Assembly (NCBI RefSeq): GCF_963853765.1
Contig: NC_088856.1
Location: forward strand, 28,582,001 to 28,646,000
DNA: 64,000 nucleotides
Source: Magallana gigas
Taxonomy: Eukaryota
Direction of reading: 5' to 3'
Shown here: in pieces, positions 2,611-62,942 of the stretch
Position numbering within the stretch: the first letter of the stretch is position 1
Layout: each line of letters opens with the position of its first letter
Notes under the pieces: model-generated
Told to the model about the DNA's origin: nothing
What the model saw: the letters and a program-made list of their open reading frames with translations, nothing else
The model's database searches: none
Translations under genes and position numbers: made by a program

Positions 2611-4693
2611 TTAGTCTTCGTCACTTTCTCTCATATAGAGAACGCTAAATCTGTTTCCGGTACTCTGGTAACTTGTTTGAACACGCTGTGTTCTTTTGTT
2701 TTCTTTCTTTTTTTCTGTACGATCCGTACACTCTTCAAAATATCTGGATGCGGCAGCTATTCCCTTTGAGTCAAGAGCATTAATCACAGCATCAAAAAGG
2801 CATTGATGTATTTGTGCAAGATTTGATTCCATTAAAAGAACTTTATGTATTAATAAGTCAGCAGATTTTTGTTTCTTAAGCTCTAGATAAACATTGTACA
2901 AAAATGTCCCTGAAAATAGATGATGTATGCATGGATTTGGAAACGGGCACATCAAAAGAGAGTTTAGGTGCATAGTACCCATAAGACAAGTCTGGAATTG
3001 TGCAAATCCATGGATTACACCAATGTCAACCGGGTGTTCTGTGGTATGGTGAATTTTGGAACTATATTGATTGAGTTTGAAAAAGACCTCTTTAAGAGAC
3101 TTATCGGTCATGTCCAGAACTGTAACTTCTATCAAATTTTTCTCACATCCAGTAGTACCATGATGAAAAAGAACCCATTTCAATTTCAACATTATCAGAC
3201 AGACCAGTATGCTGTGCAAATGGAAAATAGTTACATGTGGCTTGACTCTCTTAATCCAAAATAAAACTATTCCCAGAACTAGTTCTAGGTCCTTGGTCAT
3301 ATAATCGATGCTTAAAGACGGCATATCGATTATCCGACGAAGAATATTTTCTTTTTCAGATGACGAAAGGTTTGGAATTACTGAAAGCTTTGGGAGTTCG
3401 CCATATCCTGTCAAAGTTCTAAGAGCATGAACAGTTTCCCCCAAAAGTGTATGCCCATTTCGATCATGTTCTTCGACATCAGAAATCCTGTTTGCTGCCA
3501 ATCCTTTGTCGACGATGTCTTCTGAAAGCAGTATTCCGTACATATATTCTCTAAGTTTTGCACTACACCAATAGGAGGATGTTGAATTTGGATATTCCAC
3601 CTGATAATGTTATTATGTCTAAGGAACTTGGCGGAAGAATGCCTTGTCTATGGTAACAAACATACCATTACAGATTCATCGAACCCTTTTGCCATCGTAT
3701 TTGTTTCGCAATTGCACTGCTATCTTGCTTAAAGTATGGAAACAAGGAAAATTCCGAGTCTGTTGCATTGAAAGTAAATACTTCTATGGTTCTATCTAGA
3801 GCTGATGATATAGTTTCTAGCTGTTGTGGAGTTAATGCCTTTGATTTGATTGGCGAAATTCCGTTCTCATACGTTTTCAAACTTTCTAACCACAGAAGGA
3901 CTTTGTGGGTCCTTTTGTCAGTTATTGGAATACTTCTAAACTGTGTATCCCCTTCATATCTCCAGATGGAAGAATAAAATGGTTTAAAAATCTGTATGTC
4001 AACATAATCATTTCCTAGGAGCAGAGCCAGCAAGGGGAGGACATTTCTTCCTAAAAGTGGAAAGAAATCAACAAACTTGTTCACATGATATATTCGAGCA
4101 GTAAGAAATTTTTCCAAACCATCATTCACAATTCTGGTTTCCTCTTCAGGAAAACATACACTGTCAAGAGGTATGAATCCAGGTGTTAAAGGAAATATAT
4201 AAAAATCACTATCATTGGACAAAACTGGACAATTCAACCTGTTTGCAAGTTTTGCAATTTCTTTGTCAGCCTCAAAGTCACATACTGCAAACGGAATCTT
4301 AATTTCTTTCAAGACTGCTTTAAAAGTGTCAAATGCCATGATAGGCATTACTTTACAATTTCCCTTATATCCCTTTGCTAGTTGCATGGCCATCTCAAGC
4401 CTCTCTTTCATCCTTTTACGATTTGTCTGAAATTTCATGTCATTTGCATCATTTCCACCATCAAACACAATATAAGGCTGAATGTTGCAACAGTGGAAGA
4501 GTTTAAAGAATTTAATTATTTTATCAGCGAACTGGTCATAATCTCCACCGTGAATAAAATCCAATTGATTATAATAAAAGATGAAGTGGTACAAGCTATT
4601 TCCATCTATGACTACCTCTGTGTCATGCAGTCGAATTTCTTCCATAAGCTGTGGATTACTATTCATGAACGTTGTCAATCCTTTAATTCCCAT
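2611..4693 (-). pseudogene. ASTE1: Asteroid homolog 1-like (FEN1/XPG-family PIN nuclease), copy 1, disrupted
   Basis: MGIKGLTTF start and motifs VIDGNS, VFDGG, CDFEAD, LSNDSDF and GNDY. An in-frame TAA lies at 3670-3668; the frame continues WYVCYHRQGILPPSSLDIITL, matching copy 2. A 20-nt deletion at ~3604 then removes HRKLLVP and shifts into the 2611-3600 ORF (QVEYPNS...). The C-terminus ends in a basic stretch plus NRFSVL and an acidic tail. Confidence 0.9.
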
Positions 4694-6171
4694 GTTTCAC
4701 CGTCGTAAAGAAAGTGGAATTTAGGTTTTAACACTTGTAGATTTTTTATACAGCTGATTCAAAAAGGACTTCTGAAAAAGAAAAGGAAAAATACAGAATG
4801 TGAATCACTAAGTTACTAGTAACATAATCAACGTAATAATTTTTGCAAAGTAACACAGGAAATGCAGTGTAAAGTACGATTGTTTCAACAACAAAAATTC
4901 GTAATACCATATAATATAATTACATGTATAATAATTACAATTCTCTCCAAACGTGCATTTCAAACGGAGAAATAAAGTTTATCTCAAGAAGGAAAAACGT
5001 TACAAATTGCACTTGCCCATTTTGTGCTTTTTGTAACGACCAACTTCATTGACAAAGGACTCTCATATTTTAGGACCACCAGTGCATGAACTGCAATCCT
5101 GTAAAATTACCTCAGTAACAACTGAACATCATAAATAGATCATTTAAAAATAAATGTGTAGATCCAAATACTCCAGTTTTATTTTTCAAAACTTTAAATC
5201 AGTTTACAAATTCCATAACCCTAAGCCTGGTATTCGTTCCCAAAACAATTTTAAACTTTGACTTCTGTGTGGGTTTTTTTTTTTTCATTTAAATAGAAAG
5301 TTTACTTTCGTTCTGAGTTCCATTGCGTGCGTTCAGGCTTAAAATGAAATGGCCTGCAATCGTATCACTGAAAAGATCTCATTCATTTGGATTTGAAAAA
5401 AAAAAAATTGTACTGACGCAGGGTATTCTTTTATAAAGACACTGCCTTATGTGCCGAGATCCGATTCATTGGTAAATATTCAAATTCTTGTATATTCATA
5501 CCCTGTCCTATTACGCAAAAATTAAGCTGGATAAATGATCATTGCATTTTGCAGGGATTTATTCAGTCTGATGTTATTACTATTCCTTTAACCGACGTTC
5601 TCTCTCAATGCCATTCAATGCGGTTCGTATATACCCATCAATGCTAGACTACATTGGTAAATCTATTCAGTATTTCACTTCACCACAGGATTTTAAAACT
5701 AAAAACAACATTTTTAAAATAATTCATTAATACTCAATAACATTTTACATTCAGCTAAGCTATTATATTTTGAATTATTCAAGATTGGTTTGGTTTAATA
5801 ACTGACTTTTAATCTAGTTCATTGGATGTGATTTCTTCAAGTACTGATCATTGAGAAGAGAAATGGATAAAATCACTCAAATTTAAACGGTGTGTCAAAA
5901 GCCGTACATGGACAGCTTTATATTTAATTAATTTCATTAAGTGTGATTAGTACAATATTGATCTGTTCAATATCTACCAATATCATATAGTTTAACACAA
6001 TGAAATTTATTACTTGTATATGAGTTTAATGCAATTGGAAGAATATAATTGTTCTGTTAAAGCAAGAAGAGCATAGCGAAAAAGGGGAAGAGAAAAGACA
6101 GGAGTTTGTTGATGCAGATCATAATACAGTCTTTCATACAATTTGGTGCTTTACGGTAAAACTTTCTCCAA

Positions 6172-8732: not shown

Positions 8733-9200
8733 TGTTAATGTTTTTTTTCATTTTCCGATAATTTGATAAGACATACATAGAACTAGTCGTGTCTTTTGAT
8801 TGAAGCACTATTGAAACATATCTGGTGTCCTCTTCTATTTCTTTTAATTCAAACTACCTTCTATTAAAACACTGGAACATTTTAATCGAGTTTAGGGGCA
8901 ATAAACATCGATAAGCACCAGTCAATCAATAACCGAACTAACTTTTTAAAAACAAAATGGCTGCCAATATGGCGGCGCCCAGGGCTGGAGGACATTTTTT
9001 TGGCCTTAGTACCCCTGATTCAACTTTCATTTTTCACTGATTTTCTTATATATATGTGTTACCATTCATCCTTGCTTCGCCCACCTCTTGCTGCGCTCGG
9101 TATAATCATTAATATCGTTGCCATTTTTAGGCTACATTGATATTTTTTATAAAAAGGACTTCTATATGAAAAGTAGGAAAATATCGAAATTTAAAGTGTA

Positions 9201-9780
9201 AAGGACTATATATGATAAAGGCCTAAAATGGCCCCCTAAAATGAACATCATCATTTTACTATCATTCTTTGTTTTCTTAGTACAGATATGTATGTGATGT
9301 GTTTACATAATATTCATTTTTGTTCAAGTGCTCACAATTTAGAAATGCGACATTGTAAAGACAACCTTTTCCCGCCATTTTTGCATTTTTAGTGTAAAAC
9401 AGCTTGTTTTCAAGCAGTTTTTCCTTCCGAAAACATAGAGCGCATTCTTGAACAAATAAAATATTTTAATCAGAGATGTATCTAGCCAAGACTAATAAGT
9501 GAGAAAAAATTTTCCTTGTTCAAGCATGCGCTCTATATTTCCCATTCGTAAATAGATAAGAAAAATGTTAATTTTTGGCTGATTTTGATTGAATTTTAGA
9601 AATGGCGTCACTTTTGACGTCATATACTGCCAGTGAGTGCAAATAAATCAAATAAATAGATGAAAAATATATTTTATATCAACTCTTCTAAAAAATTAAT
9701 TAACATTTTATTGTATCCGAAGCACTTAAAAAATGGCCAATTATGGGGGCCAAAATTAACTCTTATCATATATAGTTCTT
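9201..9780. mobile_element. MITE, 580 bp, TA-flanked
   Basis: TIRs AAGGACTATATATGATAA / TTATCATATATAGTTCTT (1 mismatch in 18), with TA at 9199-9200 and 9781-9782. Confidence 0.85.
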
Positions 9781-10230
9781 TATGGATTTTTTCTTTACAA
9801 AATGATAGTTTATAGCTGAACAAACCATATCTTAAAACTTAAAATTTGATGGTTGATTTGTTGACCATCCAGCCTCTTAATTAGTTTTTTCTAATTTGTT
9901 TTCACTTGCAATTTAATAATTTGATGACCTAATTATGATAAATTAGTTATATCCATAATTTGTATATGCGTTAAATCTGTGGATGTTTGGTACTTGTACA
10001 TGTACATATATGTACCATTAAAGTTCAGCCATAATGAATTTTGATGATTTTACAGTTGAAACAAAATAATCACTTGTATTGTCTACATCACTCTTCAGAA
10101 AATATCACTCACTTTCTGCAAAAGAAACGGGGGCAACTTTGTTACAAACGATTTTAAAGTATATATATCATTCATAAATTTGGACGCAACATGATCATTT
10201 GTCTTTACTGTTGTCTTCATGATCAATTTG

Positions 10231-12201
10231 CTATCTGAAACATCTATATGCAAGTGGGCCGAGAGCCTTAATTACAGCATCATAGAGGCACTGGTATGCA
10301 CGTGAAACACTTGAGTTCTTTGAAAGCAGTTCATGTATGAATAAAATAGGAGATCTTTGTCTCTGGAGCTCTATACAAATGCTGTGCATCAAAGTTCCTG
10401 AAAATATTTGTGATATGGATGGACTTGGGAAGGGACACATCAAAAGATAATTAAACTGCATAGTTGCCATAATGCAAGTTTGAAACTGTGCAAATCCATG
10501 AATCAAATCACATTCTAATGGATGTTTCTTATTTTCTTTAGACCAGGCGACAAATGATTGAAGTCTGGAGCTGATCGCTTTTTGATTTTCAGTACCCATG
10601 CTTAAAACCGCATCTTCTATCAAGTTTTTCTCACATCCAGTAGGACCATGGTGAAAAAGTACCCATTTTACTTTCAACAAAATTAAACAAACCAGAACAC
10701 TCTGCAAATGAAAAATGGTAACTCGTGGCTTGGCTTTCTTTATCCAAAATACAACGATTCCGAGAACTAACTCAAGGTCTTTGGTTATATGATCGATGCT
10801 AAAAGAAGGCATATTAATTACTAGACGGAGGATATTTTCTTTTCCACATGGTGAAAGGTCTGGAATCTCTGAAAGTGTTGGAAGTTTGCCATATTCAGAT
10901 AAAGTATCTAAAGAGTGAACAAGTTTGCCCCTGATTTCTTGTCCACTACGATCAAACTCCTTGACAACATACATCCTGTTTGAAGCCACTCCCTCATTTG
11001 GTAGAAATCCATCAATGTGCTCTGAAAGTAAAATCCCATACATATATCTTCTTATACTTTCGCTGCATTGATAGGAGGACACTGACGATTTAGGATCTTC
11101 CACTTGGGGAACCAAAAGCTTTCTGTGTAATGTAATAATATCCATGCAACTTGGTGGAATAATTCCTTGTCTGTGTTGACAAACATACCACGCTGGAACC
11201 ATCGATCCGTTCTGACCTCGTAATGGTTCGCTGAATATAGTGCTCTTTTCCATGAAGTAAGAACTCAGAGAAAATGTGGTACCTGTTGTATTTGGTTTAA
11301 ACGCCTCCTCGGTAATTTTTATAGCCAATGAAATAGCGTCCTTATTTTGTGACTTTGACAGAATTTTCTCAATGCCTTCTCTATATGATTTTAAGTTTTG
11401 CAGCCAGAAAATGATTTTAAGAGTCCGTTTGTCGTCTGTTGGATCCGTGAGTTGTGTTTTTCCTTCTAATTGGATTGAAGCACAAAACGATTGAAATACT
11501 GTATGGTCCACATAGTCATTTCCAAGGAGGGCAGCTAATAATGGTAATACATCTCTTCCTAGAGACGGAAAGAATTTAACAAAATTATTGACATGGTATC
11601 GTCGAGCAGGAAGACAATGTTTCAGACTACCATTCTCCATTCTCATGCCTTGCAACGTGAAATTTAGGCTTTCAAAACGGATAAATCCAGATGTTATAGG
11701 TAAAATATAGAAATCACTATCGTCGGATAAAACTGGACAGTTGAACTGGTTTGCCAGATTTGCTATTTCTATGTCGGCCTCAAAATCACAAACAACAAAC
11801 GGTATCGTAATTTCCAACAAAACCGCTATAAACGTGTCGCGTGCCATTATTGGCATAACCCTGCAATAGTCACGTTGTTGTTTTGTTAGTTGAATGGCCA
11901 TTTTTAGCCTCTTTCGAATTCTACTTAGAACAGTCTGGAATTTTTTATTATTTGGTTCATTCCCACCATCAAGAACAACAAATGGTTGTATCTTGCAGGA
12001 GTGAAGAAGGCTAAAAAACTCTCTGATTTTTAGAGCATACCTGTCATAATCTCCACCGTGAAGGAGGTCAAGTTTGTTTTTGTAATATAAAAAATGGTAC
12101 AAGCTATTGCCGTCTATGACTACTTTTGTAGCATAAAGTCGAAATTCATCCGTAAGTTGTGGATTACCATTTATAAAGGTTGTCAATCCTAAAATCCCCA
12201 T
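10231..12201 (-). CDS. ASTE1: Asteroid homolog 1-like structure-specific nuclease, copy 2, open ORF of 656 aa
   Basis: Uninterrupted ORF starting MGILGLTTF, with acidic PIN/FEN1-type motifs VIDGNS, VLDGG, CDFEAD, LSDDSDF and GNDY, and C-terminal HGFAQFQ...FPSP..SQIFSG typical of asteroid proteins. The start context TGAAACATGGG is shared by all three copies. A putative 5'UTR intron acceptor (TCTCTTTCTAG) lies near 12247. Confidence 0.92.
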   Translation of the reverse strand: MGILGLTTFINGNPQLTDEFRLYATKVVIDGNSLYHFLYYKNKLDLLHGGDYDRYALKIREFFSLLHSCKIQPFVVLDGGNEPNNKKFQTVLSRIRKRLKMAIQLTKQQRDYCRVMPIMARDTFIAVLLEITIPFVVCDFEADIEIANLANQFNCPVLSDDSDFYILPITSGFIRFESLNFTLQGMRMENGSLKHCLPARRYHVNNFVKFFPSLGRDVLPLLAALLGNDYVDHTVFQSFCASIQLEGKTQLTDPTDDKRTLKIIFWLQNLKSYREGIEKILSKSQNKDAISLAIKITEEAFKPNTTGTTFSLSSYFMEKSTIFSEPLRGQNGSMVPAWYVCQHRQGIIPPSCMDIITLHRKLLVPQVEDPKSSVSSYQCSESIRRYMYGILLSEHIDGFLPNEGVASNRMYVVKEFDRSGQEIRGKLVHSLDTLSEYGKLPTLSEIPDLSPCGKENILRLVINMPSFSIDHITKDLELVLGIVVFWIKKAKPRVTIFHLQSVLVCLILLKVKWVLFHHGPTGCEKNLIEDAVLSMGTENQKAISSRLQSFVAWSKENKKHPLECDLIHGFAQFQTCIMATMQFNYLLMCPFPSPSISQIFSGTLMHSICIELQRQRSPILFIHELLSKNSSVSRAYQCLYDAVIKALGPLAYRCFR

Positions 12202-12519
12202 GTTTCATCGAGAATGTTGTTATTTTTGTCGAAACAATTGTAGACCTAGAAAGAGATATGTTTTTTATGGGGTCCTGAAAGTTACAACAGTGATGCATAA
12301 ATTGAGATACCAGGTCAACAATTATAAAAATTATTCATGATATTTTGCCGAGCAATTAATCAGGGAAATAGTCATCATAACTTTATAAAACTATCTAGTT
12401 TTACTTAAAGAAATTAATTTGAAAAAATTCTGAAGATTTTCTGTACATGTATATGTATTGCATAAAAGTTTTACTTACGCATTCATATGAAAAATAATTT
12501 CCCACTCTCTTATTTTGCC

Positions 12520-17115: not shown

Positions 17116-18283
17116 CGATCGTACAACCTAAGATACCGTAATACGTATATGTATATTAGCTTTAGGAGACCNNNNNNNNNNNNNNNNNNNNNNNNNNNNN
17201 NNNNNNNNNNNNNNNNNNNNNNNNNNNNNNNNNNNNNNNNNNNNNNNNNNNNNNNNNNNNNNNNNNNNNNNNNNNNNNNNNNNNNNNNNNNNNNNNNNNN
17301 NNNNNNNNNNNTATTCCCTATACTTAATTGGTTATTCTTCCATAAAATGTTTAAATGTTGTTAGCAAGCATAATTTTATATTCATTTTACAAGCTGAAAT
17401 CTCAATCGCCCTGAGAAGAGTTAATTTAATTTTTTGGGCACTATTCTCTTTCCTTTATCTGACAGACAGATCTAAAGATATAATAGTCTGTGTACTAGAT
17501 TGCTTCAAACTAAATTTCATAAATAACATATAGTGCTTTCATGCTATTCATATGAATCAAGGCTAGGACAACGAAAAAATAGTACTATTTCCATTTGAAG
17601 TGTAGAGTCATTTCTAAGTTATTCAATCGTGATTATTTATCTTTATAGTTAGAACATAAACAATTTCAAACGTTTCCATCAAATATCAATTGTTTGATCT
17701 AATACACTAAAACTTTTATTTTTTTATTTTTTGCTCTTTTCTACTGGCATGTAATTGCAAAGACAGCCAACATTTGACAACACTTCGCAAGTACAATTGA
17801 AAAACATCAAACAGTAAAAGAAATCCAGAAGAAATTGGTTATATTTCAGTCATGTTTTCAAATCCGATCGAATATTAATATTAACAAAGTATCATGGCAA
17901 TCATCTGTGTTTATTAAAATATTAATTATGAATGTGAAAAAACTACTTTCATCATTTGTTCATAAATGTTCCTCTTTCACGTGACTTTCTTCTCTGGTGA
18001 CTAGGAAATTTATCACAAAAATGACATCGTATATAAAAATGAAGTTCACAAATGTGTACATGTAGGTCATGGTAATTATAAGATAAAAATAACTGTAAAA
18101 AATGTAGCAAAAATAAAATAATTAGAAAATAATACAGTATTTCAAATATGTCAAATACTTGTTTCAATACGAAAAACGTCCGGTGCTCATTAACAACGAC
18201 AAAGTACACGTATGATGAACGTATGCAACACTAGTATTTAAAATTATTAACATCTTCAATATTACATTGCTCTGTTTTAATTA

Positions 18284-18492
18284 CTGTATACAGGGTTATT
18301 TTCGCCCCGTGTTATTCTCGCCCTTCTACACTTGCAAAAGATTTCGCCCCGTCTTGAATTCGCCCAGACATAGGTTTGTTTAAAGAGATTATTTTAGACA
18401 TTGGCATTGTCCCTGTCTTAAATTCGCTCGCAGACAACGAGGGCAATATCCTAGCAAAAATAAAACAGGGGCGAATATTTCCCTCTATACAG
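18284..18492. mobile_element. MITE, 209 bp, TA TSD (second copy 28250-28456 inside duplication copy B)
   Basis: TA|CTGTATACAGGGTTATTTTCGCCCC...GGGGCGAATATTTCCCTCTATACAG|TA, with internal TTCGCCC repeats. Confidence 0.85.
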
Positions 18493-19741: not shown

Positions 19742-22700
19742 TTATTCAGTATGCAGTGGGGTATAGTAGCAGTACATGAGGTGCTGGTTCCTTACATATC
19801 CAGTTCCCATTGGGTGTTTCCCGGTCGCATAGTTCTTATTCCTGGTGTCCTCATCATCAAAATATACGGACTCTTCTCTGACGTACATTCCTTTTACCAT
19901 CTGACAAGGGGACGTAAATCTCAGCAGGTAAAATGGGTGAGCCGTTGGGAGAAGAATTTCCGTGTTGTACCGACCATCGTTCCTGAGAAAAGATAAATAT
20001 CATGAAATAGCACTTTTCTTAAAACTTACCAAGACCGACCAAGTTCATATCCAAATGAACTCTTTTAACATTTCTGTGTTTTTCTTCTATTAAAATATCA
20101 TATTTACAAAAAAAATTTATAAGACAAAGAGCTCGCAGTCAAAATGGACTTTAAAATGGGAATGAAGAAAAACATGAATCAGTGTATTGCTTAAAAATTA
20201 TAAATCAATTGCAAGGTAAAAAAGCATTCACAAAATAGGGATTGGAGTAATATCATTTTTTCTAAATTTGATGATTTGTGCTATTGATTGTTTTAAAATT
20301 TGCCCCAAGGAAAGCAATCGAAATTTACGCCAAAAATACACATTAAGCCGATATAAAAAGAAAGTACGTCGAATAATTGCGACGGTGCCCAAATCCCCCT
20401 TTAAAGAAAATTCGGTCACTCACTGATGAATAATTTAATTTTGTGGGAGCCAATTTTCGTGGATTGTGGGGTTTTTTGGTCATTCAATGGAATATAACTT
20501 CCTCGAATGATTCTATTTTTATTTTCAACAGAAAAAATTAATTTTTTAATTAGTTTTCGTCAAGGATGTAAATTTGTAGGATGGAGCGCTACCCAAGAAC
20601 ATCTCGAAAATTGGGCCAAAACAAATTATAATGATTCCACAGTAATTTTAAATGCAATTTTAATTTTAAAAAAAAACCAACATCTCCGATNNNNNNNNNN
20701 NNNNNNNNNNNNNNNNNNNNNNNNNNNNNNNNNNNNNNNNNNNNNNNNNNNNNNNNNNNNNNNNNNNNNNNNNNNNNNNNNNNNNNNNNNNNNNNNNNNN
20801 NNNNNNNNNNNNNNNNNNNNNNNNNNNNNNNNNNNNNNNNNNNNNNNNNNNNNNNNNNNNCATGTATTGCAACTACATGTAACACTTTGTCGGATAATAA
20901 TGCCAGTTCCAAGGTGACATTTTTACATCCGTCTAAGCTGCATATTCTGCAAAATTCAACTTTGCCATAAAATAGACCATTGCTTGAAGAGTAACCAGCC
21001 ACCTTTGTTATCCTTGTATCTCACCTGTCAGGTAAGATACTAACTTTTCAAAAATAATTTTTTACGGTAGAATAATTTTTCCCAAAGGAAAAACAATATT
21101 CCTATGGTAAATTTGAAATTTCCTATCGGAATAATAGAATCATTCGTTATTACGAGTGTGGTATAGTGAAATTCCACCGATGGGACAAGATTCACGGTCT
21201 AGGACGAGGCTTTGCCGAGTCCTAGACCGTGAATCTTGGCCCCGAGGTGGATTTCACTATCCCACACGAGTATATAATGAATGATTACTTTTCTCGCATT
21301 ATATTACCTTAAAAAATGATGTTTGACAACTTTCTGTTTTGACGTTCAAAAGATTACTTTCGGTTTATCCCTCCGCGTGCTTCAAATAGTGCAAGTCAAA
21401 ATGAGAGCATACGACAGTTTTTTAATTAAAAATATGATAAATTGTAATTAATTAAGCAACACAATTACTTAATGGATAATCTCAATGCACCATTTTGCAT
21501 TTCCCTACAGCAGACAACGTTTGTTTACGTTTTAAAACGGCTTAGTAATACACAGTGTAAGACAGAAAAATCTCACACTGCTGTCTCACACCGGACAAAC
21601 CGATCTCACACCGGTGCTAATGCGAGAATACAATATCTCTGATACGATTTGATAAAATCCGATAGGAAATCTACATTTCCTTCAGGAAAACTATCTGTCT
21701 CAATCAACTTCCGACAGGAAATACTATTCTCCTATAGAAAATATAATTACCATAGGGTTTTTCATAATATCCTATAGGATTGTCAATATTTCCTGTAGGA
21801 GTGTCATTTCTCCTATGGGAATTATCATTTTCTTATTGGATATAAATTTTTAAAGATAAATATCTCACCTGTCAGGTAAAACTCGCTAAAAACAAAAGTG
21901 GTAAGCAAAAGTGGTTTTATACCCTTTAGACAATGGTTTATTATTTAGCATCTATGGTTTTTCCCAGAAATGTATCTTAAACAGGTGCAATAATGTCACC
22001 TTGGCAATGGTATAATTATCCGGCACAGTATTATATACGGAATTGAATAAAACGATTTTAAAAAGTTTTAATTGGTGGTGTGCGTTCGTTTAATATGCAT
22101 TTACACACCTGCAGCAGTAATAGATATCGGTGTTTCTTCCAAATGAACCCCTTGGTAATATTCCTCCATGCGAGTTTTTATTTAACGCATCTTCGTCGTC
22201 CCAATGAACATGACCAGATTCAAATCCTTTTAAGAAATCACATTATTTATAATCAGTGAATTGATATCTACATATTTATTGCGATCATACATCATTAAAT
22301 CTTCTTGATTTAATTTAAACAGGACTGCTTTGCGACGATATTATTTCCTAACTTTGCAAATCCTAAATATATTTACATTAGGAATACTGGAATTAAAAAT
22401 CGGTGACACTTAAAACTAAATCAGAAGATCTCCTTGGGCCATATCGCTCACCTGAGCAACAATAGCCATAACAAAATCACTTTCATGGAGCTATAAACAG
22501 ACTAATGAAGTAAAATAGGTCCTGAAATTTTATTTTCAAAAATTCTAATTTGCTTCCAGATAATCTTATGTTAAACATCAATCATCTTCTTGTAACAGGA
22601 TGAATTTATAGTTTTATCACAAATCAAGCATTAATGTCCTCAAAACAAAAGATCTCAAACAACTGTTCATATTAGGGATATGAATTAACATCAAACGTTG

Positions 22701-25160
22701 AGCCCTTTGTGGGGCCCAATAATTGTTAAGGGGCAAAAATCTAAACAATTTTTTAAAAAAAATGACAATATGTCAAAATGCTTGCATATTCCATATGTTA
22801 TAACATTTGAGTTTTTGAGAATAATTTACCTTTTTTTCCTTTGTTAACTTTGATCCCCCCAAATGTGGCCCCACCCTACGGAAAATCCTGAAGACTATGA
22901 TTTTGACGGATTGAATTTACATTATATAAGATTTCTTTCACAAAAGTTAAAGCTTTTTTAGGCAAATGGTTTTTAGATGAAATAGGTCTTTTCTCTATAT
23001 CTTCCGATGTAAAAAAAATTCGGCCCAAAATCGTGGCCCTTCCTATATCCCAAGAATCATCATTTTAACAAACATGAATCTACCTACCTGAGGATGTTTC
23101 CACACAAGTTTCAACTTTCCTGGCCGATCGGTTTCTGAGAAGATTTCTAAAGATTTTTCTCAATTATTCCTATGTAAAAATTCACCAACCCACCTCCATT
23201 GTGGCCCCACTTTATCCCCGGGGATCATAATTTGAGAAACGATGCTTCCACACAAGTTTTCAGCTTTTTGCCCAATAAGTTTTTAAAAAAGAAGGTTTTT
23301 AGAGATGTACTGTATATATGTGTATGTAAAAATTCGACCTCCTATCCTAACTCCGGGGACCATGATATGAACAAACTTGAATCTACACGACCTGAGGAAG
23401 ATTTCACTTAAGCTTCTCAGCTTTTCTGGCCAAATGGTATTTGAGAAAAAGATATTTGAAAAGAACTAGCAAATTTTCAATAATTCTTAATAATCTCCCC
23501 TTGAAAAAGGCCGTGGCCTTTCATTTTAACAAATTTGAATCTCTTTCACCCAATACTGCTTTGTGCAAAGTTTGGTTGAAATTGGCCCAGTGATGATGGA
23601 AAAGAAAAAGTCACGGTATGAATGGCTTACCCCCTGCCGGGCAGGATTCTCCGTGTTGCAGAATGCAGTAATTCCCGGCTGGCCACCTGCCCCCTCTATC
23701 CCCAACATTTGCAATCTTTGTACAGTAGAAAAACTTCATATTTCTTCCAAAACTTCCTGTATTTTAGAAATGAAAATATTAAATTATTACATCAAATTAT
23801 GATTTTTAGAGATGTATGCTGTTGAGGAATAAATAATCATTGAATATTATGAGATTATATTTTTGTCGAGGCGTGATCAAGTCCAATTTATGATAAATTT
23901 GATCACTACTCTACCAATTAATTACCACCTCTTAATATTCAAAGAGCTATTCCTTATTACTTATTTTTATTTAGTTTTCAGCAAATGTACGATTATCTAT
24001 TAAAAAATTGACATTTTTACTTTATTTCCATTTCGTATATTTTATGCTAAACCCGTTTGCGCTCCAACATTTAGTCTACTTGGTCATTGATGAAATGAAT
24101 TGAACTATATGCTACAAGTTTGATTTGTGGTGTTATCACAAAGAATTTAATTCAGAGAGGATTAAAAGTACTCGATGGCCGTGGCCAAGGTTAGACTGTA
24201 TTGATCGCCTTTGGAAGAAGAGCTCTAGATATATAAAAATATAGGAAAATGCCCAAATTTAAACGGTAAATCTTATGGATTTTTTATTTGCTAAATAATT
24301 ATTTATATCTAAACAAATCATATCCGAAAAATTTAGGTTAGATTTAATGCATCAAAATATGAAATAAATTTACACAAAGTTGTCAGTCCTGTCACTGCAT
24401 AGTTAACTGCATAGTTAACAAAGCGTATTGTGTGCGCAAATAGTAGAATTCGCCGAATGCCTGATACTATACATGCAATTTTCATTTATATAGATCATAA
24501 TTATTTTTGAAGTATGAACCCTTTAAATTCTGAGATAAAAAGTAATGGCTATACATATACGTAATATAACGTTCAAATTAAGTGGTTAAAAGCACAGGCT
24601 AGAGTCGGTGGAATCTGTGATATTCTTAGGTATTTCACGTTTTCGTTAAAAACATATGCTTTTGTTCAACGTATTGCAGTCCTTTTTAAAGGACAGCAAC
24701 TTGTATGTGTTTTATTCGTACCGGCGAAATGAGGATCATAGGAAAAACTGTTCTTATTATTGCCATCCTCGTTGTCTTGGTAGGTCCAGCCTTCTCTCCA
24801 ACCGGGCGGACAGCCAGATTTTGGTTTAACCAAAGTGTATGTTCCGCTCGGCCATTCCACTGAAAGAGGTGTCCGTTTAGATATGTTCAAATCTTTAAAA
24901 TGATTTATATTTTGTAATAAGTTTAAAAGTATGAAACTTTCAGTTACTAGAACTAATGTTACTTCAAAGACTTTTTAGCAATACGGTTGTTTGTTCTTCG
25001 GTTACCAAATCTTTTAATTCAAAAAATTTTTTTGAAATCATAGAAATTCGTACAAAGAGCTACAGCAGCATTGCTGAAACCGTTTTTGAGTACCATGATG
25101 ATTACCTGCAATAGCTACGGATGTAAGACAGAGAACAACAATAGCGCAAAATGTTTCCAT
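19742..25160 (-). CDS. Secreted apextrin-like single ApeC-domain protein, 225 aa, 5 coding exons
   Basis: Exons 25160-25106 (METFCAIVVLCLTSVAIA, signal peptide), 24859-24722 (EWPSGTYTLVKPKSGCPPGWREGWTYQDNEDGNNKN), 23756-23631 (SFGRNMKFFYCTK...WPAGNYCILQHGESCPAG), 22226-22109 (FESGHVHWDDEDALNKNSHGGILPRGSFGRNTDIYYCCR) and 19982-19742 (NDGRYNTEILLPTAHPFYLL...CQMVKG...FDDEDTRNKN...YCYYTPLHTE*). All introns are GT-AG, phases 1,1,1,2 match, and the total is 678 nt. AATAAA overlaps the stop. Confidence 0.9.
21017..21879. repeat. Segment bounded by 19-bp direct repeat TATCTCACCTGTCAGGTAA, containing a degenerate ~22-bp minisatellite with TCCTATAGGA-like palindromic cores
   Basis: Identical 19-mers at 21017-21035 and 21861-21879. 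Repeated TTCC(N4-5)GGA cores occur at 21080-21133 and 21655-21840. Confidence 0.75.
21134..21630. mobile_element. Long-hairpin (foldback) non-autonomous element
   Basis: Inverted arms of ~70 bp (21138-21290) around the loop GAGGCTTTGCCGA. GAATA direct repeat at 21129-21133 and 21626-21630. The element interrupts the minisatellite. Confidence 0.75.
22423..23610 (+). mobile_element. Helentron-type non-autonomous element carrying Cg170/HindIII-like satellite (ApeC intron 3)
   Basis: 5' end TGGGCCATATCGCTCACCTGAG. Tandem units with GTGGCCCC at 22865, 23033 and 23201 (168-bp period) contain GATCATGA..AACAAA.TTGAATCTAC...CCTGAGGATG.TTCCACACAAGTTT. The 3' end is truncated. The family assignment is from recalled oyster repeat structure. 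Confidence 0.8.
23826..24080 (+). mobile_element. Hairpin-type element related to 53095-53398 (ApeC intron 2)
   Basis: Shares GAATATTATGAG...CTC.TAATATTCAA...TTCCTTATTACTT and AACCC(G/C)G.TTGC.C.CCAACA with the 53.1 kb copy. Confidence 0.6.
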
Positions 25161-34886: not shown

Positions 34887-34955
<69 letters not shown>

Positions 34956-42167: not shown

Positions 42168-42243
<76 letters not shown>

Positions 42244-42677: not shown

Positions 42678-42736
<59 letters not shown>

Positions 42737-43462: not shown

Positions 43463-45152
43463 CTAGTTTAAATATTTGATTTTCTTTACACTGCCTTCGT
43501 TATACTCACATATAAACAGATAGTCATTATTGTCCACACATAAACTCTAAGGATTCTCCATATTACAGTTATCAGTATAACAGAGAAACTCTCCATTCTG
43601 ATCACATAAACCAAAAGGATACCTCAGATCACAGTTATCAATGTAACGGAGAAAATGTCCATTCTGATCCAGAATGTGGACACAATTGTTGTCTCTGTCT
43701 GTTGTCAGGATACGACTCTGACTGTCTGTTGTGATACCTCGGGTTTTAAATTGTTCGGTTTTTTGGTAACTGGGTAATGGCCGGTGCATTTCCATCTGAG
43801 TTTTCTACCCTGATTAACCACCACTACTGCACTAACCTCCAGATATCATGGTTTCTGTTCTCAGTGATGTACTTGCATTTTATCTTAGTATTGCCTGAGT
43901 ACAGAGGTTTACCGTCATCGTCAAATTGAATGGTTTGTTTGTAGATCCTATGTAACGAACAACTTTCGATTGAGTTTTATCATCAGTGCACATAGAAACC
44001 AGGAGATCACTAGTAGAGGTGACACACAGCTGACGAGGCTTTATCCCTGTAATCTTATCAACTCTTCTGTCTGTTCATTTTTAACTCTATTTACTGTTTT
44101 TGTTCTTCCATTTGAGTACAGTAGATCCCCTATGTTGTCTACGGCTATATCATTTGGGAATTTCCCTGATTTTGATTTGATTGTCTCAAGGAGTAAACCT
44201 TGAATATTGAAGCACTTGATATCATTGGTCTCATCACTTGCCCATATCCTGTGTTCATTACGACAGGTAATATTTCGTTGATATTCATGCCCAGTCTGTA
44301 TTGTAGCAACAAGCCCCGATTCATCCAGTAGTTCTCTGCCTGATGGGTTTAATTGGTTTAGTGACAATATAATTTCCTCTGTAGCAGTAGATAATGGGAT
44401 GATCAGTCCAAACAAACTTAACAACTTCCCATTGTCTATAGGTTTTGGAATGAATGTTGGCAGTGATACCTGAACCTTGGGTGGAAGCTTGATGAACTCT
44501 GCGATCTTAGTGTATTTCTTGAGTTCCTTTAAGGCCAGTGATGTTTTTTTTATGAGAAATTGTACTTCTTTGACCTTATTCAAATGTTTTAGCAAAATGT
44601 GTCTGTGTTTCAATTTAATATCGCTGATTTCAATTTTTATTTTGATAATTACAATTCGATTTCTCTGTGCCGTTGCTCCCCTTGATTGGATATAGCTGTT
44701 GTAAGTTTCCCATATCCTCCATCCAGGTTTGCAAATTGCTTTTCCAAGTCAAAGATAATTTCTTCATATGAAGGAGAAATTAGATTTTCTAAATCTATTG
44801 TATCCTTTTCAATTACTTCTTTCATTGTCTTGAAAACGTCTGTAACATCTACAAAGTTATATCCCTTGTGTTGTTCAGATGCTATGCAGGAAGAACAAAC
44901 CAAACTGTTGTTGCAATCTGTGCACCGAAATTCACAAATTTTATGCGGATGTTTTCCACATTTTGGATAAATGAGAGTTGATCTGCGTTCCTTGAAAGGG
45001 ACAATTTCATGTTTGTCATATTTATCTAATATATGATCTAGTATACAGGGTTTTCAGAGGTTGACATGACAAAAGTCACAGTAGCTGTGTACTATGTCGG
45101 TCTCACAAAGGACACATCGATGTACATCCTGGGCACTAGAACGAGGATCCAT
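43463..45152 (-). pseudogene. TRIM-like B-box/NHL pseudogene, copy 2
   Basis: ATG at 45152 (MDPRSSAQDVHRC). TGA replaces a B-box Cys at codon 33 (45056-45054), there is a 1-nt frameshift near 44655, an in-frame deletion after the coiled coil, TAA at ~44041 and further indels. A 66-bp tandem duplication spans 43537-43668. The paralogous stop is at 43465-43463. Confidence 0.93.
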
Positions 45153-49371: not shown

Positions 49372-51036
49372 CTAATTTGAATATTTGATTTTTTTTACAT
49401 TGGCTTTCCAATACTCGCAGACAAACAGATTGTCGTTATTGTCAACGCATATACCATAAGGACTCTTTAGATCACAGTTATCAATGTAACGGAGAAAATT
49501 TCCATTCTGATCCAAAATGTAAATACAATGGTTTTCAAAGTCTGCTGTCAGGATACGACCCTGACTGTCTGTTGTGATACCACGGGGTTTACATGTTTTG
49601 TTCGTGGTAACTAATGGATGAGCAGTGTATCTCCATCTGAGTTTCCCGTCCTGATTAACCACCACTACTGCACCAGCCACACTGTCAGCTACACAGATGT
49701 CATGGTTTCTGTTCTCAGTGATGTATTTAGTATAACCATTCCCTGAGTACAGAGGTTTACCTTCATCATCAAATTGAATGGTTTGTTTCTCTGTAGATCC
49801 TGAGTAACGGACAACTTTGGATTGAGATTTATCATCACTGAACATGGTAACCAGGAGATCACCAGTAGAGGTGACACACAGATTAAAGGGCGTCCATCCC
49901 TGTAATCTGATCAACTCGTCTGTCTTTCCATTATTTACTCTATACACTGACTTAATTCTTCCCTCAGAGACAATTAGATTTGAATCGCTGTATACAGTAA
50001 TACCCAGGGGTAATTTTCCAGATTTTGTATAGACCGTCTGGAGGAGTGAACCTTTACTGTTGAAGCATTTGATTTCATTGGTCTCCCCACTTGTCCAAAT
50101 CCTGACCTCGTTATCACAGGTAATATTGCGTAAGGATGCATGCCCAGTCTCTATTGTGGCAACCATCTTCGGTACATCTAGTAGTTCTCTGACTGAAGTA
50201 TTGAGTTGGTTTAGTGACAAAACAGTTTCCTCAGTAGCAGTAGATAATGGGATAATCTTTCCAAACAAAGTATACAGCTTATCACTGTTTGTTGGGTTTG
50301 GAATGAATGTTGGCAGTGATACTTGAACCTTAGGTGGAAGCTTGCTGAACTCTCTGATCTTAGAGCTGTACTCAATAGTAGGAGATACGTCAGTGGATTT
50401 CTGGAGTTCCTCTAAGGCTAGTAAAGTCTGCTTTATGAGAGACTGTATCTGTTTGATTTCATCTAAATGTTTCTGTAAGATGTCTTTGTGTTTTACTTTC
50501 ATATCGCTGATTTCAGTTTTCATTTTGTTGATAACGTTGTCGATTTCTCTATGCCATTGCTCTTTTTGTTTAGAAATTGTTGTTGTAAGTTTCTCATATT
50601 CTCCATCCAGGTTGGCAATTTGATTTTCCAAGTCCAGTGCAATATCATCATATGTAGGAGAAATAAGGTTATCTAATTCTACTTTATCTTTTTCCATTAC
50701 CTCTTTCTTTGTCTTGTAAACCTCTGATAATTCTAGAAATTTATGGCCTCTGTGTTTTTCAGATGCCATACAAGATGAACAAATCAAAATGTTGTTGCAA
50801 TTCTCACATTGAAAATCACAGATTTTGTGTGAATGTGTTTCGCATTTCGGATAAATGAGGGTTGATCGTCGATCCTGGAAGGGGACTATTTTATGTTTGT
50901 CATATCCATCTGTAATGTGTTCACCTATACAGGGCTTGCACAGGTTGACATGACAAAAGTCGCAGTAGCTGTGTACTATGGGGGTCTCACAAAAGTCACA
51001 TTGGTGCACATCCTGGGCAGTAGAATGTGGATCCAT
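49372..51036 (-). CDS. RING-less TRIM-like protein (2 B-boxes, coiled coil, NHL), 554 aa, copy 3
   Basis: MDPHSTAQD start after acceptor TTTTTCAG. Same architecture and length as copy 1, roughly three-quarters identical by eye. Putative 5'UTR exon donor G|GTAAGT near 52397. Confidence 0.92.
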   Translation of the reverse strand: MDPHSTAQDVHQCDFCETPIVHSYCDFCHVNLCKPCIGEHITDGYDKHKIVPFQDRRSTLIYPKCETHSHKICDFQCENCNNILICSSCMASEKHRGHKFLELSEVYKTKKEVMEKDKVELDNLISPTYDDIALDLENQIANLDGEYEKLTTTISKQKEQWHREIDNVINKMKTEISDMKVKHKDILQKHLDEIKQIQSLIKQTLLALEELQKSTDVSPTIEYSSKIREFSKLPPKVQVSLPTFIPNPTNSDKLYTLFGKIIPLSTATEETVLSLNQLNTSVRELLDVPKMVATIETGHASLRNITCDNEVRIWTSGETNEIKCFNSKGSLLQTVYTKSGKLPLGITVYSDSNLIVSEGRIKSVYRVNNGKTDELIRLQGWTPFNLCVTSTGDLLVTMFSDDKSQSKVVRYSGSTEKQTIQFDDEGKPLYSGNGYTKYITENRNHDICVADSVAGAVVVVNQDGKLRWRYTAHPLVTTNKTCKPRGITTDSQGRILTADFENHCIYILDQNGNFLRYIDNCDLKSPYGICVDNNDNLFVCEYWKANVKKIKYSN

Positions 51037-51355
51037 GGTTGTTCTGAAAAAAAAATTAAATTCAAACACTTAATAAATTGTTAATACCATTTTTTAAAAA
51101 GACTTACTTGAAATATACATGTACTTGTACATTCTTAATCATAATAAAACACGTCGAGAAATAAAAAAAATTGTAGGTACAATATTTTTTAATTCGAAAA
51201 TGAAATTAAAACTGTTTTTGAACAACACTTTCTTGCAATTCACAATCAATATAACAAAAAAAATAATAATTATAATTTGATCTAAGTAATACATGTCAAT
51301 TGAGGAATACCCTAACAACCCCTCTTAAAGAATCTCGCATTGGTGTATAACTTAA

Positions 51356-58621: not shown

Positions 58622-58757
58622 AACCTATGTCATTGATGCTTGTCGGATCCCTTATTATCTAGTTTGCCTTTGAAGCGATTTGGTGTCTTTAAACAACTTG
58701 AAATAGTTGTCAATATGTTATATTATGTATGTGTGAAAACCTAAATAGGGTAATCAT

Positions 58758-58810
<53 letters not shown>

Positions 58811-60853: not shown

Positions 60854-62942
60854 TTACAATTCAAGATCAGTGCACAGCAACATCTGTTGCACTTGATCTT
60901 TTCGTTTTAGCCTTATTCTAGTTTTCCTCAAAAAGACAGGTTTTGAACAACTTTCAACAGATTCATATATGTGTGGTAAACATTTTTCATCATACAGTTT
61001 TCCTACGTATGGAGTGTATTTGCTATAATGATATCTGTTCTCTGTATATCTAAATGCAGTTGGTCCTACAGCTTTATTGACAGCATCAAAGAGGCATTGA
61101 TAAATCTGTATAAGATTTGAATTCTTTGATAGCATTTCATATATAAATTGATCAGGATCTTTTCTTTTATTTTCTTTGCAAAAGTTATATAAAAAGTTCC
61201 TGAAAATATGTGTGGTATGTATGGACCTGGAAAGGGGTCCAGAAAAAGAGAATTCAAATGCATAGTAGCCATAATGCAAGTCTGAAACTGTGCAAAGCCA
61301 TGGATTAAACCACAGTCTACTCGAGATGTTCTAGACTTTTTATATTTACTAAGTTTTTCATTGACCGTTTTTAAAGTTTTGGCTTTTATGCCAAATAGTG
61401 CAGCTTCTATCAAATTTTTCTCACACCCGATTGAAGCAGGGTACATAAGAGCCCACTTTACTTTTAGCATTATCAAACAAACCAGGACACTTTGCATATG
61501 GGAAATCGTTACCTTTCGCTGGGAATTCCTAATCCAAAATATAACTATTCCCAGATTTAGTTCAAGATCTGGTGTCATATGATCAATGTTAAAACAAGGT
61601 ATATCTAAAATCATGCGAAGTAGATTTTTTTTCTCATTTCGCGAGAGGTCTGGAATATCTGATAGTTTAATCGATTTGCCAGAATAGGTCTCAGGTTTTA
61701 CAGGGTTTATACCCTGACTAATAATTATATCTCCTCTTCTGTCAAACTCCTCAACAACACTTTTCATGTTTGATGCTATTCCCCAGGCTCCATTTGTCTC
61801 GAAATCGGCACTGTCCTCAGAGAGCAGTATTCCATATATATATTTTCTTAGGTTTACGCTAGATTGATAAGAGGAAGCTAATGAGTTTGGATCTTCCACC
61901 TGAGGACTTAAAAACTTTCTGTGTAATGTAATAATGTCCAAACAATTTGGAGATATCAACCCTTTTCTGTGATGAGAAAGATACCACATGGGAATCGCGG
62001 ATTCATTAACAAATCTTATTTGATTTTCACCTATCTGTTCTTTTCCCATGAAGTATGCATATAGAGAAGATTCAGTTTCTGGTACATTTGCTTGAAATGT
62101 TTCAATAATTATGCCTTCACTATATGATTTCAACCCTTGTAACCAAAGAAGAACTTTGAGAGTCCTCTTGTCACCAGGTGATTTCCAATCCTGCGTTTCA
62201 CATTCATTTGACTGGATTGAATCATTGAAAGATTTAAACACATCTTTGTCGATATAATCATTTCCAAGGAGGGCAGCTAACAATGGAAGAACTTCTTTCC
62301 CCAAAGACGGAAAGAAATTATCAACATGATAGAGTCTGGCACGAAGAAAATGTTCCACGCTGTTATTCTCCCCTTTAATTTCTTGTAAATTGAAAATTAC
62401 TTTGTCAAAACTAATAAATCCGCCCGTTAATGGAAAAATAAAGAAATCACTATCGTTTGATAGGACAGGACAGTTCAACGTATTTGCAAGCATTGCAATT
62501 TCTTTGTCAGCCTCGAAATCACACACTGCAAATGGTATGCTCAGTTTCTTTAAAACTGCTTTAAAAGTATCAAATGCAAGGATTGGCATAACTCTTTTCT
62601 TGCATCGAATTCCACTAGCAATTCGCTTGGCGTTTTCAAGTCTCTGCTTCATTCTCTTTTGTATTGTTTGAAATTTCAGGTAATTTGGATCATTACTATA
62701 GTACCACCATCAAACACAACATAAAGCTCGATGTTGCAGGAGTGAAGGAGGCTAAAGAATTCTGTGATTTTTATGGCATATTGATCATAATCCCCTCCAT
62801 GATAGAAATCCAAATGGGTATAATCAAAAATGAAATGATACAGGCTATTGCCATCTATAACAAGCCTTGTTGAATGCAGCGAAAATTCCTTCGTAAGTTG
62901 TGGATTGCAATTAACGAAGGTTGTAAGTCCTGGAATTCCCAT
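60854..62942 (-). pseudogene. ASTE1: Asteroid homolog 1-like, copy 3, disrupted
   Basis: MGIPGLTTF start with the same acidic motifs. An 8-nt insertion ACTATAGT at 62695-62702 follows FDGG, and a 1-nt deletion lies in the T-run at 61191-61195 (SGTF|LYN). There is also an in-frame loss of ~19 codons near 62110 relative to copy 2. The three track ORFs join into one asteroid-length reading frame. Confidence 0.9.

What the first reader, a model, noticed from the sequence alone, without database searches (positions are those of the whole stretch)
2611..62942. Co-oriented birth-and-death cluster: ASTE1-like nucleases x3, B-box/NHL TRIM-like x3, secreted ApeC - candidate bivalve defence locus
Seen: every host gene in 60 kb is on the minus strand, two families are triplicated, and three of the six family members are disrupted. 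Known: ApeC proteins act as microbial-surface recognition proteins in amphioxus, TRIM-like B-box/NHL genes are expanded in bivalves, and ASTE1 is normally a single-copy DNA-repair nuclease. Inference: a repair nuclease that duplicates, diverges and dies at an immune-gene pace beside TRIM-like and ApeC genes may have been recruited as a nucleic-acid-cutting defence effector. Co-location alone does not prove shared function.
Basis: partly seen in the sequence, partly recalled or inferred. Interest (0 to 1): 0.72.

Follow-up and report, generated by a model that had tools for sequence, protein, structure and literature searches.

The report
Oyster ASTE1-like nuclease cluster among immune-type arrays
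This stretch of Pacific-oyster chromosome holds real, partly decayed duplicates of an ASTE1-type DNA nuclease between a tandem array of secreted ApeC genes and a huge array of B-box/NHL genes. That shows ordinary duplication and decay in a duplication-prone region; a defence role for the nucleases was not tested.

Summary
The window is Magallana gigas chromosome piece C4, 28.582-28.646 Mb. On its minus strand lie three ASTE1/asteroid nuclease copies (B intact; A and C broken) and three RING-less B-box/NHL genes (two intact, one decayed). There is also an intact five-exon ApeC gene with a signal-peptide-like start, and a NAPE-PLD-like gene missing from the finding's title. None of the four assembly gaps touches a coding exon.

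Context weakens the interpretation:
- The B-box/NHL genes belong to a family with 2,472 candidate hits in the genome, so lying next to them says little.
- Co-orientation ends 6 kb left of the window, at an inverted segmental duplication that made ASTE-A.
- The genome has eight ASTE loci, six within 335 kb here. The subfamilies are old (dS above 1) and under purifying selection (omega 0.2-0.3). Only the D-to-A/A' copies are recent, and both are dead.

New points: one ASTE gene and the first two ApeC exons duplicated as a unit. All copies keep the seven catalytic acidic residues. Subfamilies B and C lost the family's conserved C-terminal tail. ASTE-B appears transcribed without splicing.

A defence role is untested. 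I rate it about 12% likely.

The parts
2611..4693 (-). ASTE-A, a recently duplicated and disrupted ASTE1-like copy. It has a TAA at codon 339 (3668-3670) and a 20-bp frameshifting deletion near 3604.
   Evidence: It is 91.6% nt identical to the intact parent D over the coding region (dS 0.18). Its nearest intact relative is P0013 (dS 0.087).
1..5302 (.). Right arm of a roughly 7-kb segmental duplication. The left arm is inverted and lies just outside the window, with the palindrome centre about 1.7 kb left of base 1. The unit is ASTE plus the first two ApeC exons.
   Evidence: Self-blastn: -1595..5302 matches -47265..-39632 directly at 85-91% identity, and matches -8640..-1859 inverted at 85-93%. 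tblastn map; signal-exon copies.
9025..12264 (-). ASTE-B transcription unit. The intact 656-aa ORF is 10231-12201. The RNA is unspliced, with a 5' end near 12264-12274.
   Evidence: The X1 contig of 2,678 nt covers 9025-9202 and 9779-12264. The X3 contigs end at 12274.
9203..9778 (.). A 576-bp high-copy MITE-like repeat in the ASTE-B 3' UTR. It is present in this assembly and absent from the X1 contig.
   Evidence: joint 9202>9779; 50-nt imperfect terminal inverted repeats; 1,955 candidates, copies 95-99% identical.
19742..25160 (-). Short-form ApeC gene. Five exons, 225 aa, with a signal-peptide-like N-terminus and a complete ApeC domain.
   Evidence: PF16977 positions 1-54, 89-134 and 133-208; middle exon; gene model with GT-AG introns.
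29119..31111 (-). NAPE-PLD-like metallo-beta-lactamase-fold gene with at least four exons. It is low-copy, with 2 loci in the genome.
   Evidence: PF12706 hits on three exon ORFs, together spanning profile positions 3-200.
35251..36969 (-). TRIM-like gene A (B-box, then NHL repeats; no RING), intact and single-exon.
   Evidence: It is 74% aa identical to copy C.
43466..45152 (-). TRIM-like pseudogene B, with 9 indels and 4 in-frame stops.
49372..51069 (-). TRIM-like gene C, intact. The 554-aa product P0142 is 100% identical to it.
61049..62942 (-). ASTE-C, a disrupted ASTE1-like copy of an old subfamily. It has a 2-bp insertion at codon 81 and a 63-bp deletion, and it lies inside the TRIM-like array.
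   Evidence: It is 95.8% nt identical to intact P0019 (dS 0.05, omega 0.77).

Best explanation
The window lies where two lineage-specific tandem arrays of the Pacific oyster meet. On the left is a roughly 120-kb array of seven short-form ApeC loci (C4 28.485-28.607 Mb). On the right is a multi-megabase array of RING-less B-box/NHL genes. An oyster-specific subfamily of ASTE1/asteroid XPG-type nucleases has been scattered across this junction by tandem and segmental duplication.

The shared orientation and the mix of intact and dead copies are by-products of that duplication followed by loss of redundant copies. They do not indicate a co-regulated defence unit.

Shown:
- The intact nucleases (B here; D, E and F elsewhere) keep all seven catalytic acidic residues.
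- They evolve under moderate purifying selection.
- ASTE-B appears transcribed.

Inferred:
- They are working structure-specific DNA nucleases that have split or changed the ancestral ASTE1 role.
- Subfamilies B and C have lost the conserved C-terminal N[RK]FxxL-acidic tail, so they have probably lost an ancestral partner or localisation signal.
For: - Gene content and breaks.
- ASTE loci: 8 in the genome, 6 on C4 between 28.31 and 28.64 Mb.
- ApeC array and interleaving with ASTE.
- TRIM-like family size and arrays.
- Segmental duplication: a 7-kb unit (ASTE-D plus the first two ApeC exons) was copied once directly and once inverted at 85-94% identity (signal-exon copies). Old paralogs share only the coding region, with no terminal repeats or transposase.
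- Tree: an oyster-only clade (SH-aLRT support 100) with subfamilies F, E, C, D/A and B, each with relatives in other sources.
- Selection: omega 0.22-0.33 within the B clade and 0.19-0.31 between subfamilies, with dS of about 1 or more. The recent D/A/A' set has dS 0.08-0.20.
- Catalytic residues: D30, D78, E141, D143, D161, D163 and D229 (B numbering) align to EXO1 active-site positions and are kept in all eight copies.
- Expression: ASTE-B is covered by transcript-like contigs with matching 5' ends in two runs.
Against: - Clustering with two immune-type families, and the co-duplication of ASTE with an ApeC exon pair, could reflect functional coupling rather than chance.
- The Crassostrea angulata gene record for ASTE-D runs from the ASTE start codon to the ApeC stop codon. 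That hints at shared transcripts.
- Omega of about 0.3 is higher than I would expect for a core repair gene (my own knowledge, not tested here), and tail loss suggests a new role.
- Runs X1 and X3 are only presumed to be RNA.
- Two poly(A) RNA runs show almost no ASTE-B reads. Expression is therefore conditional, and the conditions are unknown.
Confidence: 0.72

Rival explanations
1. Defence recruitment. The expanded oyster ASTE1-like nucleases, above all the tail-less B and C subfamilies, act as nucleic-acid-cutting effectors against viruses or other foreign DNA. On this reading the ASTE-ApeC pair is a functional two-gene module kept together by selection.
For: - The expansion is oyster-specific, with five retained subfamilies.
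- Active-site residues are intact.
- The conserved C-terminal tail is lost in B and C.
- Omega is about 0.3, close to the neighbouring TRIM-like genes at 0.34-0.47.
- ASTE-D and the first two ApeC exons duplicated together.
- The C. angulata gene record spans both genes.
- ASTE-B expression looks conditional.
- Oyster short-form ApeC proteins bind peptidoglycan (PMC9585378).
Against: - There are no induction or activity data.
- TRIM-like adjacency is expected by chance inside a megabase array.
- The ASTE-ApeC pairing traces to one ancestral unit, so it is a single event.
- A low-copy NAPE-PLD-like gene, not an obvious immune gene, lies in the middle.
- ASTE loci F and G sit outside the cluster.
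- No window reached omega above 1.
- A secreted lectin-like protein and an intracellular nuclease have no obvious shared mechanism.
Confidence: 0.12
2. Mobile-element cargo. The intronless ASTE-like ORFs are carried by, or derived from, a transposable element, and that explains their multiplicity and decay.
For: All copies are single-exon ORFs. Several are dead. The region is rich in repeats, including a young MITE in the ASTE-B 3' UTR and a non-LTR retrotransposon ORF 12 kb to the right.
Against: - Old paralogs share homology only across the coding region, within about 10 bp of the ORF ends.
- The shared sequence shows no terminal repeats and no transposase or reverse transcriptase.
- The only long shared flank is a host segmental duplication that includes ApeC exons.
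- There are only 8 loci in 564 Mb.
- Each subfamily is under purifying selection and has relatives in other sources.
Confidence: 0.03
3. Partly an assembly artefact. Some of the disruptions, or the inverted duplication, are errors in a gap-containing assembly, so fewer copies are truly dead.
For: - There are four gaps in 12 kb of this window.
- The region is repeat-rich.
- Intact relatives of A and C exist elsewhere at dS 0.05-0.09.
Against: - The breaks are a 20-bp deletion plus a nonsense codon (A), a 2-bp insertion plus a 63-bp deletion (C), and 9 indels plus 4 stops (TRIM-like B). These are not typical consensus errors.
- None is near a gap.
- The duplicated arms differ by 6-15%, so they are not collapsed or duplicated haplotigs.
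Confidence: 0.08

Closest known systems
Vertebrate ASTE1 (asteroid homolog 1), a single-strand DNA / 3'-overhang endonuclease of the 53BP1-shieldin end-joining pathway (PMC9778356, citing Zhao et al. 2021)
   Same: - Same domain set: XPG_N, XPG_I_2 and the Asteroid domain PF27698.
- 28-32% identity over about 98% of the length.
- All seven acidic active-site residues are present.
- Oyster subfamilies D/A, E and F keep the C-terminal N[RK]FxxL-acidic tail also seen in fish and insect proteins.
   Different: - The oyster has eight loci in six lineages.
- All copies are intronless.
- They evolve faster.
- Subfamilies B and C, and the divergent G, lack the conserved tail.
- Three loci are pseudogenes.
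- No activity or partner data exist for any mollusc member.
Bivalve tandem expansions of immune-type families, for example C1qDC (PMC6835236), and the general expansion of innate immune genes in C. gigas (PMC4346834)
   Same: - Lineage-specific tandem and segmental duplication.
- Intact copies mixed with pseudogenes.
- Moderate omega.
- Copies lie in same-strand runs.
   Different: - The expanded family here is a DNA-repair nuclease, which my literature searches did not find reported as expanded in bivalves.
- The copy number is small (8), against tens to hundreds for the known cases.
CgACP1, a short-form ApeC protein of C. gigas (219 aa, signal peptide plus ApeC domain, binds peptidoglycan; PMC9585378)
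   Same: The window's ApeC gene encodes 225 aa with a signal-like start followed directly by a full ApeC domain.
   Different: - I did not establish whether it is CgACP1 itself or a paralog.
- It belongs to a seven-locus local array.
- Binding was not tested.
TRIM-NHL proteins (TRIM2, TRIM3, TRIM71/LIN-41, Brat). These are the names that databases give to oyster members of this family.
   Same: B-box zinc finger followed by C-terminal NHL repeats.
   Different: - No RING domain was detected.
- The genes are single-exon and encode 554 aa.
- There are hundreds of paralogs at 71-76% identity in megabase arrays.

Membership tests
ASTE1 / asteroid family | N-terminal XPG-type PIN nuclease domain (XPG_N plus XPG_I) | tested here: met
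   - Copy A N-terminal half: XPG_N at 33.9 bits (cut-off 22) and XPG_I_2 at 24.5 bits (cut-off 24.2).
- Copy C: XPG_I_2 at 31.2 bits.
- Copy B alone falls just under both cut-offs, at 17.8 and 21.7 bits.
- Precomputed Pfam for close relatives lists PF00752 and PF12813.
ASTE1 / asteroid family | Asteroid domain (PF27698) | tested here: met
   Precomputed PF27698 hits on P0001 (100% identical to copy B) and on nearly all listed relatives. Unmarked (strong) hits on the B-clade products.
ASTE1 / asteroid family | Seven acidic metal-binding residues of the FEN1/EXO1 superfamily active site | tested here: met
   The alignment to human EXO1 covers the first six positions, up to residue 167. The seventh (D229 in LGNDY) was assigned from the motif, using my own knowledge of the fold. 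All seven are kept in all 8 oyster copies, pseudogenes included.
ASTE1 / asteroid family | Full-length similarity to named vertebrate and insect ASTE1/asteroid proteins | tested here: met
   Fish ASTE1 proteins match at E of about 1e-80 to 1e-60, with 93-99% query coverage and 26-32% identity. In the tree the oyster copies group with the other animal asteroid proteins sampled.
ASTE1 / asteroid family | Conserved C-terminal N[RK]FxxL motif with an acidic tail | tested here: not met
   - Present in fish, insect and oyster F, E, D and A copies.
- Absent from copy B, which ends at a nonsense codon relative to P0003-type relatives. Absent also from the C clade and from G.
- It is a conserved feature that I observed, not a published defining one.
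ASTE1 / asteroid family | ssDNA / 3'-overhang endonuclease activity and shieldin association | not testable with these tools
   This needs biochemistry. Known only for human ASTE1 (PMC9778356).
TRIM (tripartite motif) family | N-terminal RING finger | tested here: not met
   No RING-family Pfam hit at E<=0.01 in either intact copy. The N-terminus is a second B-box-like Cys/His cluster. 'TRIM-like' is the right label, not TRIM proper.
TRIM (tripartite motif) family | B-box zinc finger | tested here: met
   PF00643 at 29.4 and 31.9 bits, against a cut-off of 24.1.
TRIM-NHL subfamily | C-terminal NHL-repeat beta-propeller | tested here: met
   PF01436 at 32.5 and 47.2 bits, against a cut-off of 20. 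Weaker beta-propeller family hits (PF24684, PF08450) span residues 306-562.
Short-form ApeC-containing proteins (ACPs) | Complete ApeC domain (PF16977) | tested here: met
   Exon-wise hits cover profile positions 1-54, 89-134 and 133-208. The exon for positions 55-93 was found by homology to paralogs. The spliced ORF is open.
Short-form ApeC-containing proteins (ACPs) | Leading signal peptide | tested here: inconclusive
   Exon 1 encodes METFCAIVVLCLTSVAIA, which is hydrophobic and ends with small residues. Paralogs have MEKRGICLVLCLIAGVTFAG at the same position. No signal-peptide predictor was available.
Short-form ApeC-containing proteins (ACPs) | Peptidoglycan binding / bacterial agglutination | not testable with these tools
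   Shown for CgACP1 and amphioxus ACPs only (PMC9585378).

The most novel reading that the evidence does not exclude
Oysters have turned a duplicated ASTE1-type repair nuclease into a small family of conditionally expressed nucleases that have lost the ancestral C-terminal tail. On this reading they cut foreign or aberrant nucleic acid, and they are genetically coupled head-to-tail with a secreted peptidoglycan-binding ApeC gene in a module that duplicates as a unit and may be co-transcribed.
Probability: 0.12. Interest if true: 0.75.

Novelty: new member of a known kind. Interest (0 to 1): 0.4.

Why it matters
Bivalves are known for tandem expansions of recognition and signalling families. 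An expansion of a DNA-repair nuclease has not turned up in the literature I could search.

If the oyster ASTE1-like paralogs have new roles, they would be a rare animal case of a repair nuclease diversifying by gene duplication. They would also give a handle on ASTE1 biology outside vertebrates.

As it stands, the main value is cautionary. Co-orientation and adjacency to TRIM-like genes in this genome are explained by array structure and cannot be read as functional linkage.

Tried and rejected
- Mobile-element origin of the ASTE copies: rejected. Paralog homology stops at the ORF ends, and the shared sequence has no terminal repeats or transposase.
- Gap artefacts as the cause of the broken genes: rejected. 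No gap touches a coding exon.
- Spliced 3' exon that would restore the C-terminal tail of ASTE-B: rejected. The transcript-like contig is collinear with the genome apart from a polymorphic MITE, and the frame after the stop still reads like the relatives' tail.
- A slow, canonical ASTE1 ortholog in the oyster: not found. The divergent C6 copy (G) also has close relatives only in oysters, and is only 44% identical to its Saccostrea relative.
- Literature on ASTE1/asteroid in oysters or bivalves: none found. A search for the run accessions also found nothing.
- Rfam scan of the window: no hits.
- Pfam scan of ten plus-strand ORFs: no hits.
- Infection-induced expression: could not be tested.

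Full report
**What is in the window**

The window is G000:C4:28582001-28646000. This contig's length, 57,946,171 bp, is the same as that of records named Magallana gigas, so the genome is the Pacific oyster.

All are on the minus strand.
- ASTE-A, 2611-4693: broken.
- ASTE-B, 10231-12201: intact, 656 aa.
- ASTE-C, 61049-62942: broken.
- TRIM-like A, 35251-36969: intact.
- TRIM-like B, 43466-45152: decayed.
- TRIM-like C, 49372-51069: intact.

Pfam gives XPG_N and XPG_I_2 for the nucleases, and B-box plus NHL, with no RING, for the TRIM-like genes.

**The breaks are real lesions**

- ASTE-A carries a TAA at codon 339 and a 20-bp deletion relative to its parent copy.
- ASTE-C carries a 2-bp insertion at codon 81 plus deletions of 63, 9, 6 and 3 bp relative to an intact relative.
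- TRIM-like B carries 9 indels and 4 in-frame stops.

**ApeC gene and the assembly gaps**

Exon-wise Pfam hits and homology to paralogs allowed a five-exon model with canonical GT-AG introns. It encodes 225 aa. A hydrophobic signal-like start (METFCAIVVLCLTSVAIA) is followed directly by a full ApeC domain. This matches the short-form ApeC proteins described in C. gigas (PMC9585378).

The four gaps lie as follows:
- two in intergenic DNA;
- one in ApeC intron 4;
- one starting 30 nt upstream of the ApeC start codon.

None interrupts a coding exon. Splice phase and Pfam profile positions run on correctly across the intron-4 gap, but physical continuity cannot be proven. I did not try to fill any gap.

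A four-exon NAPE-PLD-like metallo-beta-lactamase gene (31111-29119) also lies here. It has only two loci in the genome. No plus-strand gene or Rfam family was recognised.

**Genomic context changes the reading**

- TRIM-like family size: the TRIM-like query gave 2,472 first-look candidates. The 77 that were scored are all 71% identical or more, and they lie in dense runs on C4 (18-32 Mb) and C10. 1,735 database clusters match at E<=1e-40, and sources give them names such as TRIM2-like, TRIM71-like, lin-41-like or 'uncharacterized'. Two more copies follow within 26 kb to the right of the window. Lying next to TRIM-like genes is therefore expected for anything in this part of C4.
- ApeC array: there are seven ApeC loci between 28.485 and 28.607 Mb. 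The window holds the rightmost one.
- ASTE loci: the genome has eight. Six are on C4 between 28.31 and 28.64 Mb, one is on C3, and a divergent one (35% identity) is on C6.

**How the copies arose**

Self-comparison of 194 kb around the window shows a 7-kb unit holding the intact ASTE-D gene and the first two exons of its downstream ApeC gene (the signal exon and the first domain exon). This unit was copied twice, once inverted and once direct. The two copies form a near-palindrome whose centre lies about 1.7 kb left of the window.
- The right arm carries ASTE-A.
- The left arm carries a second disrupted copy, A', on the plus strand.

The window's uniform orientation therefore ends just outside it.

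D, A and A' differ by dS 0.08-0.20, with pairwise omega 0.35-0.41. The other paralogs share only the coding region, at 68-71% nt identity. That argues against a transposon vehicle.

**Family history**

A maximum-likelihood tree of the eight oyster copies, their database relatives and outgroups gives a fully supported oyster-only clade with subfamilies F, E, C, D/A and B.
- Each subfamily has relatives in other, unnamed sources.
- F, the C3 locus, groups with named Saccostrea proteins.
- The Saccostrea echinata member of the F clade lies beside a fucokinase-type gene, with no TRIM-like or ApeC gene within 10 kb.
- Subfamilies differ by dS of about 0.95-1.6, with omega 0.19-0.31.
- Within the B clade omega is 0.22-0.33. 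It is lowest in the nuclease domain (mostly 0.11-0.28) and highest in the middle of the protein (up to 0.67). One window reached 0.73 in a single pair, and none exceeded 1.
- Intact relatives of the two dead window copies exist at dS 0.087 (A against P0013) and 0.05 (C against P0019). These deaths are therefore recent and may be polymorphic.
- The C6 copy (G) likewise has close relatives only in oysters, and evolves fast.

**Function**

All seven acidic residues of the EXO1/FEN1-type active site are kept in every copy.

A C-terminal N[RK]FxxL motif followed by an acidic tail is conserved from fish and insects to oyster F, E and D. It is missing from the B and C clades and from G. In ASTE-B the loss comes from a stop codon, after which the frame still reads like the relatives' tail.

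Expression of ASTE-B:
- Transcript-like contigs cover it in two runs, with matching 5' ends at 12264 and 12274 and no splicing.
- These runs are only presumed to be RNA. Their assemblies are small (91 and 107 Mb) and leave stretches on both sides of the gene uncovered.
- Two poly(A) RNA runs show almost no reads over the gene.
- Six runs of unrecorded type hold 96-100% of its words. Their assembly sizes (540-684 Mb) suggest DNA.

**Verdict**

The birth-and-death description is right. It results from ordinary tandem and segmental duplication at the junction of two large arrays.

The TRIM-like link is uninformative. The ASTE-ApeC link is real but traces to a single ancestral unit.

An oyster-specific expansion of ASTE1-type nucleases, with tail loss in two subfamilies, seems not to have been reported. 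It is modestly interesting. A defence role remains an untested possibility, which I put at about 12%.

Noticed in passing
window 9203-9778: A 576-bp MITE-like element with roughly 50-nt imperfect terminal inverted repeats sits in the ASTE-B 3' UTR. It has at least 1,955 candidate copies in the genome, many full-length at 95-99% identity, so it is young. It is absent from the contig of run X1, which makes it an insertion polymorphism. It accounts for the deep pile of reads at 9190-9786 in the poly(A) RNA runs.
   Followed up: partly
L025:10001-18640 (Crassostrea angulata CM046783.1, homolog of the region about 40-48 kb left of the window): The gene record that yields the 697-aa ASTE-D ortholog runs from the ASTE start codon exactly to the stop codon of the downstream ApeC gene. 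An annotated isoform therefore appears to join the two genes. Two M. gigas contigs carrying ASTE-D are collinear with the genome and stop about 1 kb after the ASTE stop codon, so they do not show the join.
   Followed up: partly
about 10 kb left of the window to window 5302 (G000:C4:28573200-28587300): A near-palindromic segmental duplication with roughly 7-kb arms at 85-93% identity. Its centre lies about 1.7 kb left of window base 1. Each arm carries a dead ASTE copy and copies of the ApeC signal exon and first domain exon.
   Followed up: yes
window 17769-19250 and 27715-29224: A roughly 1.5-kb repeat at 85% identity lies just downstream of the ApeC gene and again across the 3' end of the NAPE-PLD-like gene. 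This is why the tail of the last NAPE-PLD-like ORF matches window 19145-19249 at 97%.
   Followed up: no
window 46292-46519 (minus strand): A 76-aa ORF with a weak, sub-threshold resemblance to the viral alkaline exonuclease / YqaJ family (E 0.07). It is probably a fragment of a mobile element lying between two TRIM-like genes.
   Followed up: no
L012:1395-5030 (G000:C4, about 11-15 kb right of the window): A 1,212-aa ORF that looks like a non-LTR retrotransposon (endonuclease-type N-terminus), lying inside the TRIM-like array. I ran no family search on it.
   Followed up: no
window 34723-35089, 42013-42840, 58749-58936: Long (GA/TC)n dinucleotide microsatellites lie in the TRIM-like part of the window, two of them next to TRIM-like genes. 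They show up as poly-(Ser-Leu) and poly-(Glu-Arg) ORFs.
   Followed up: no
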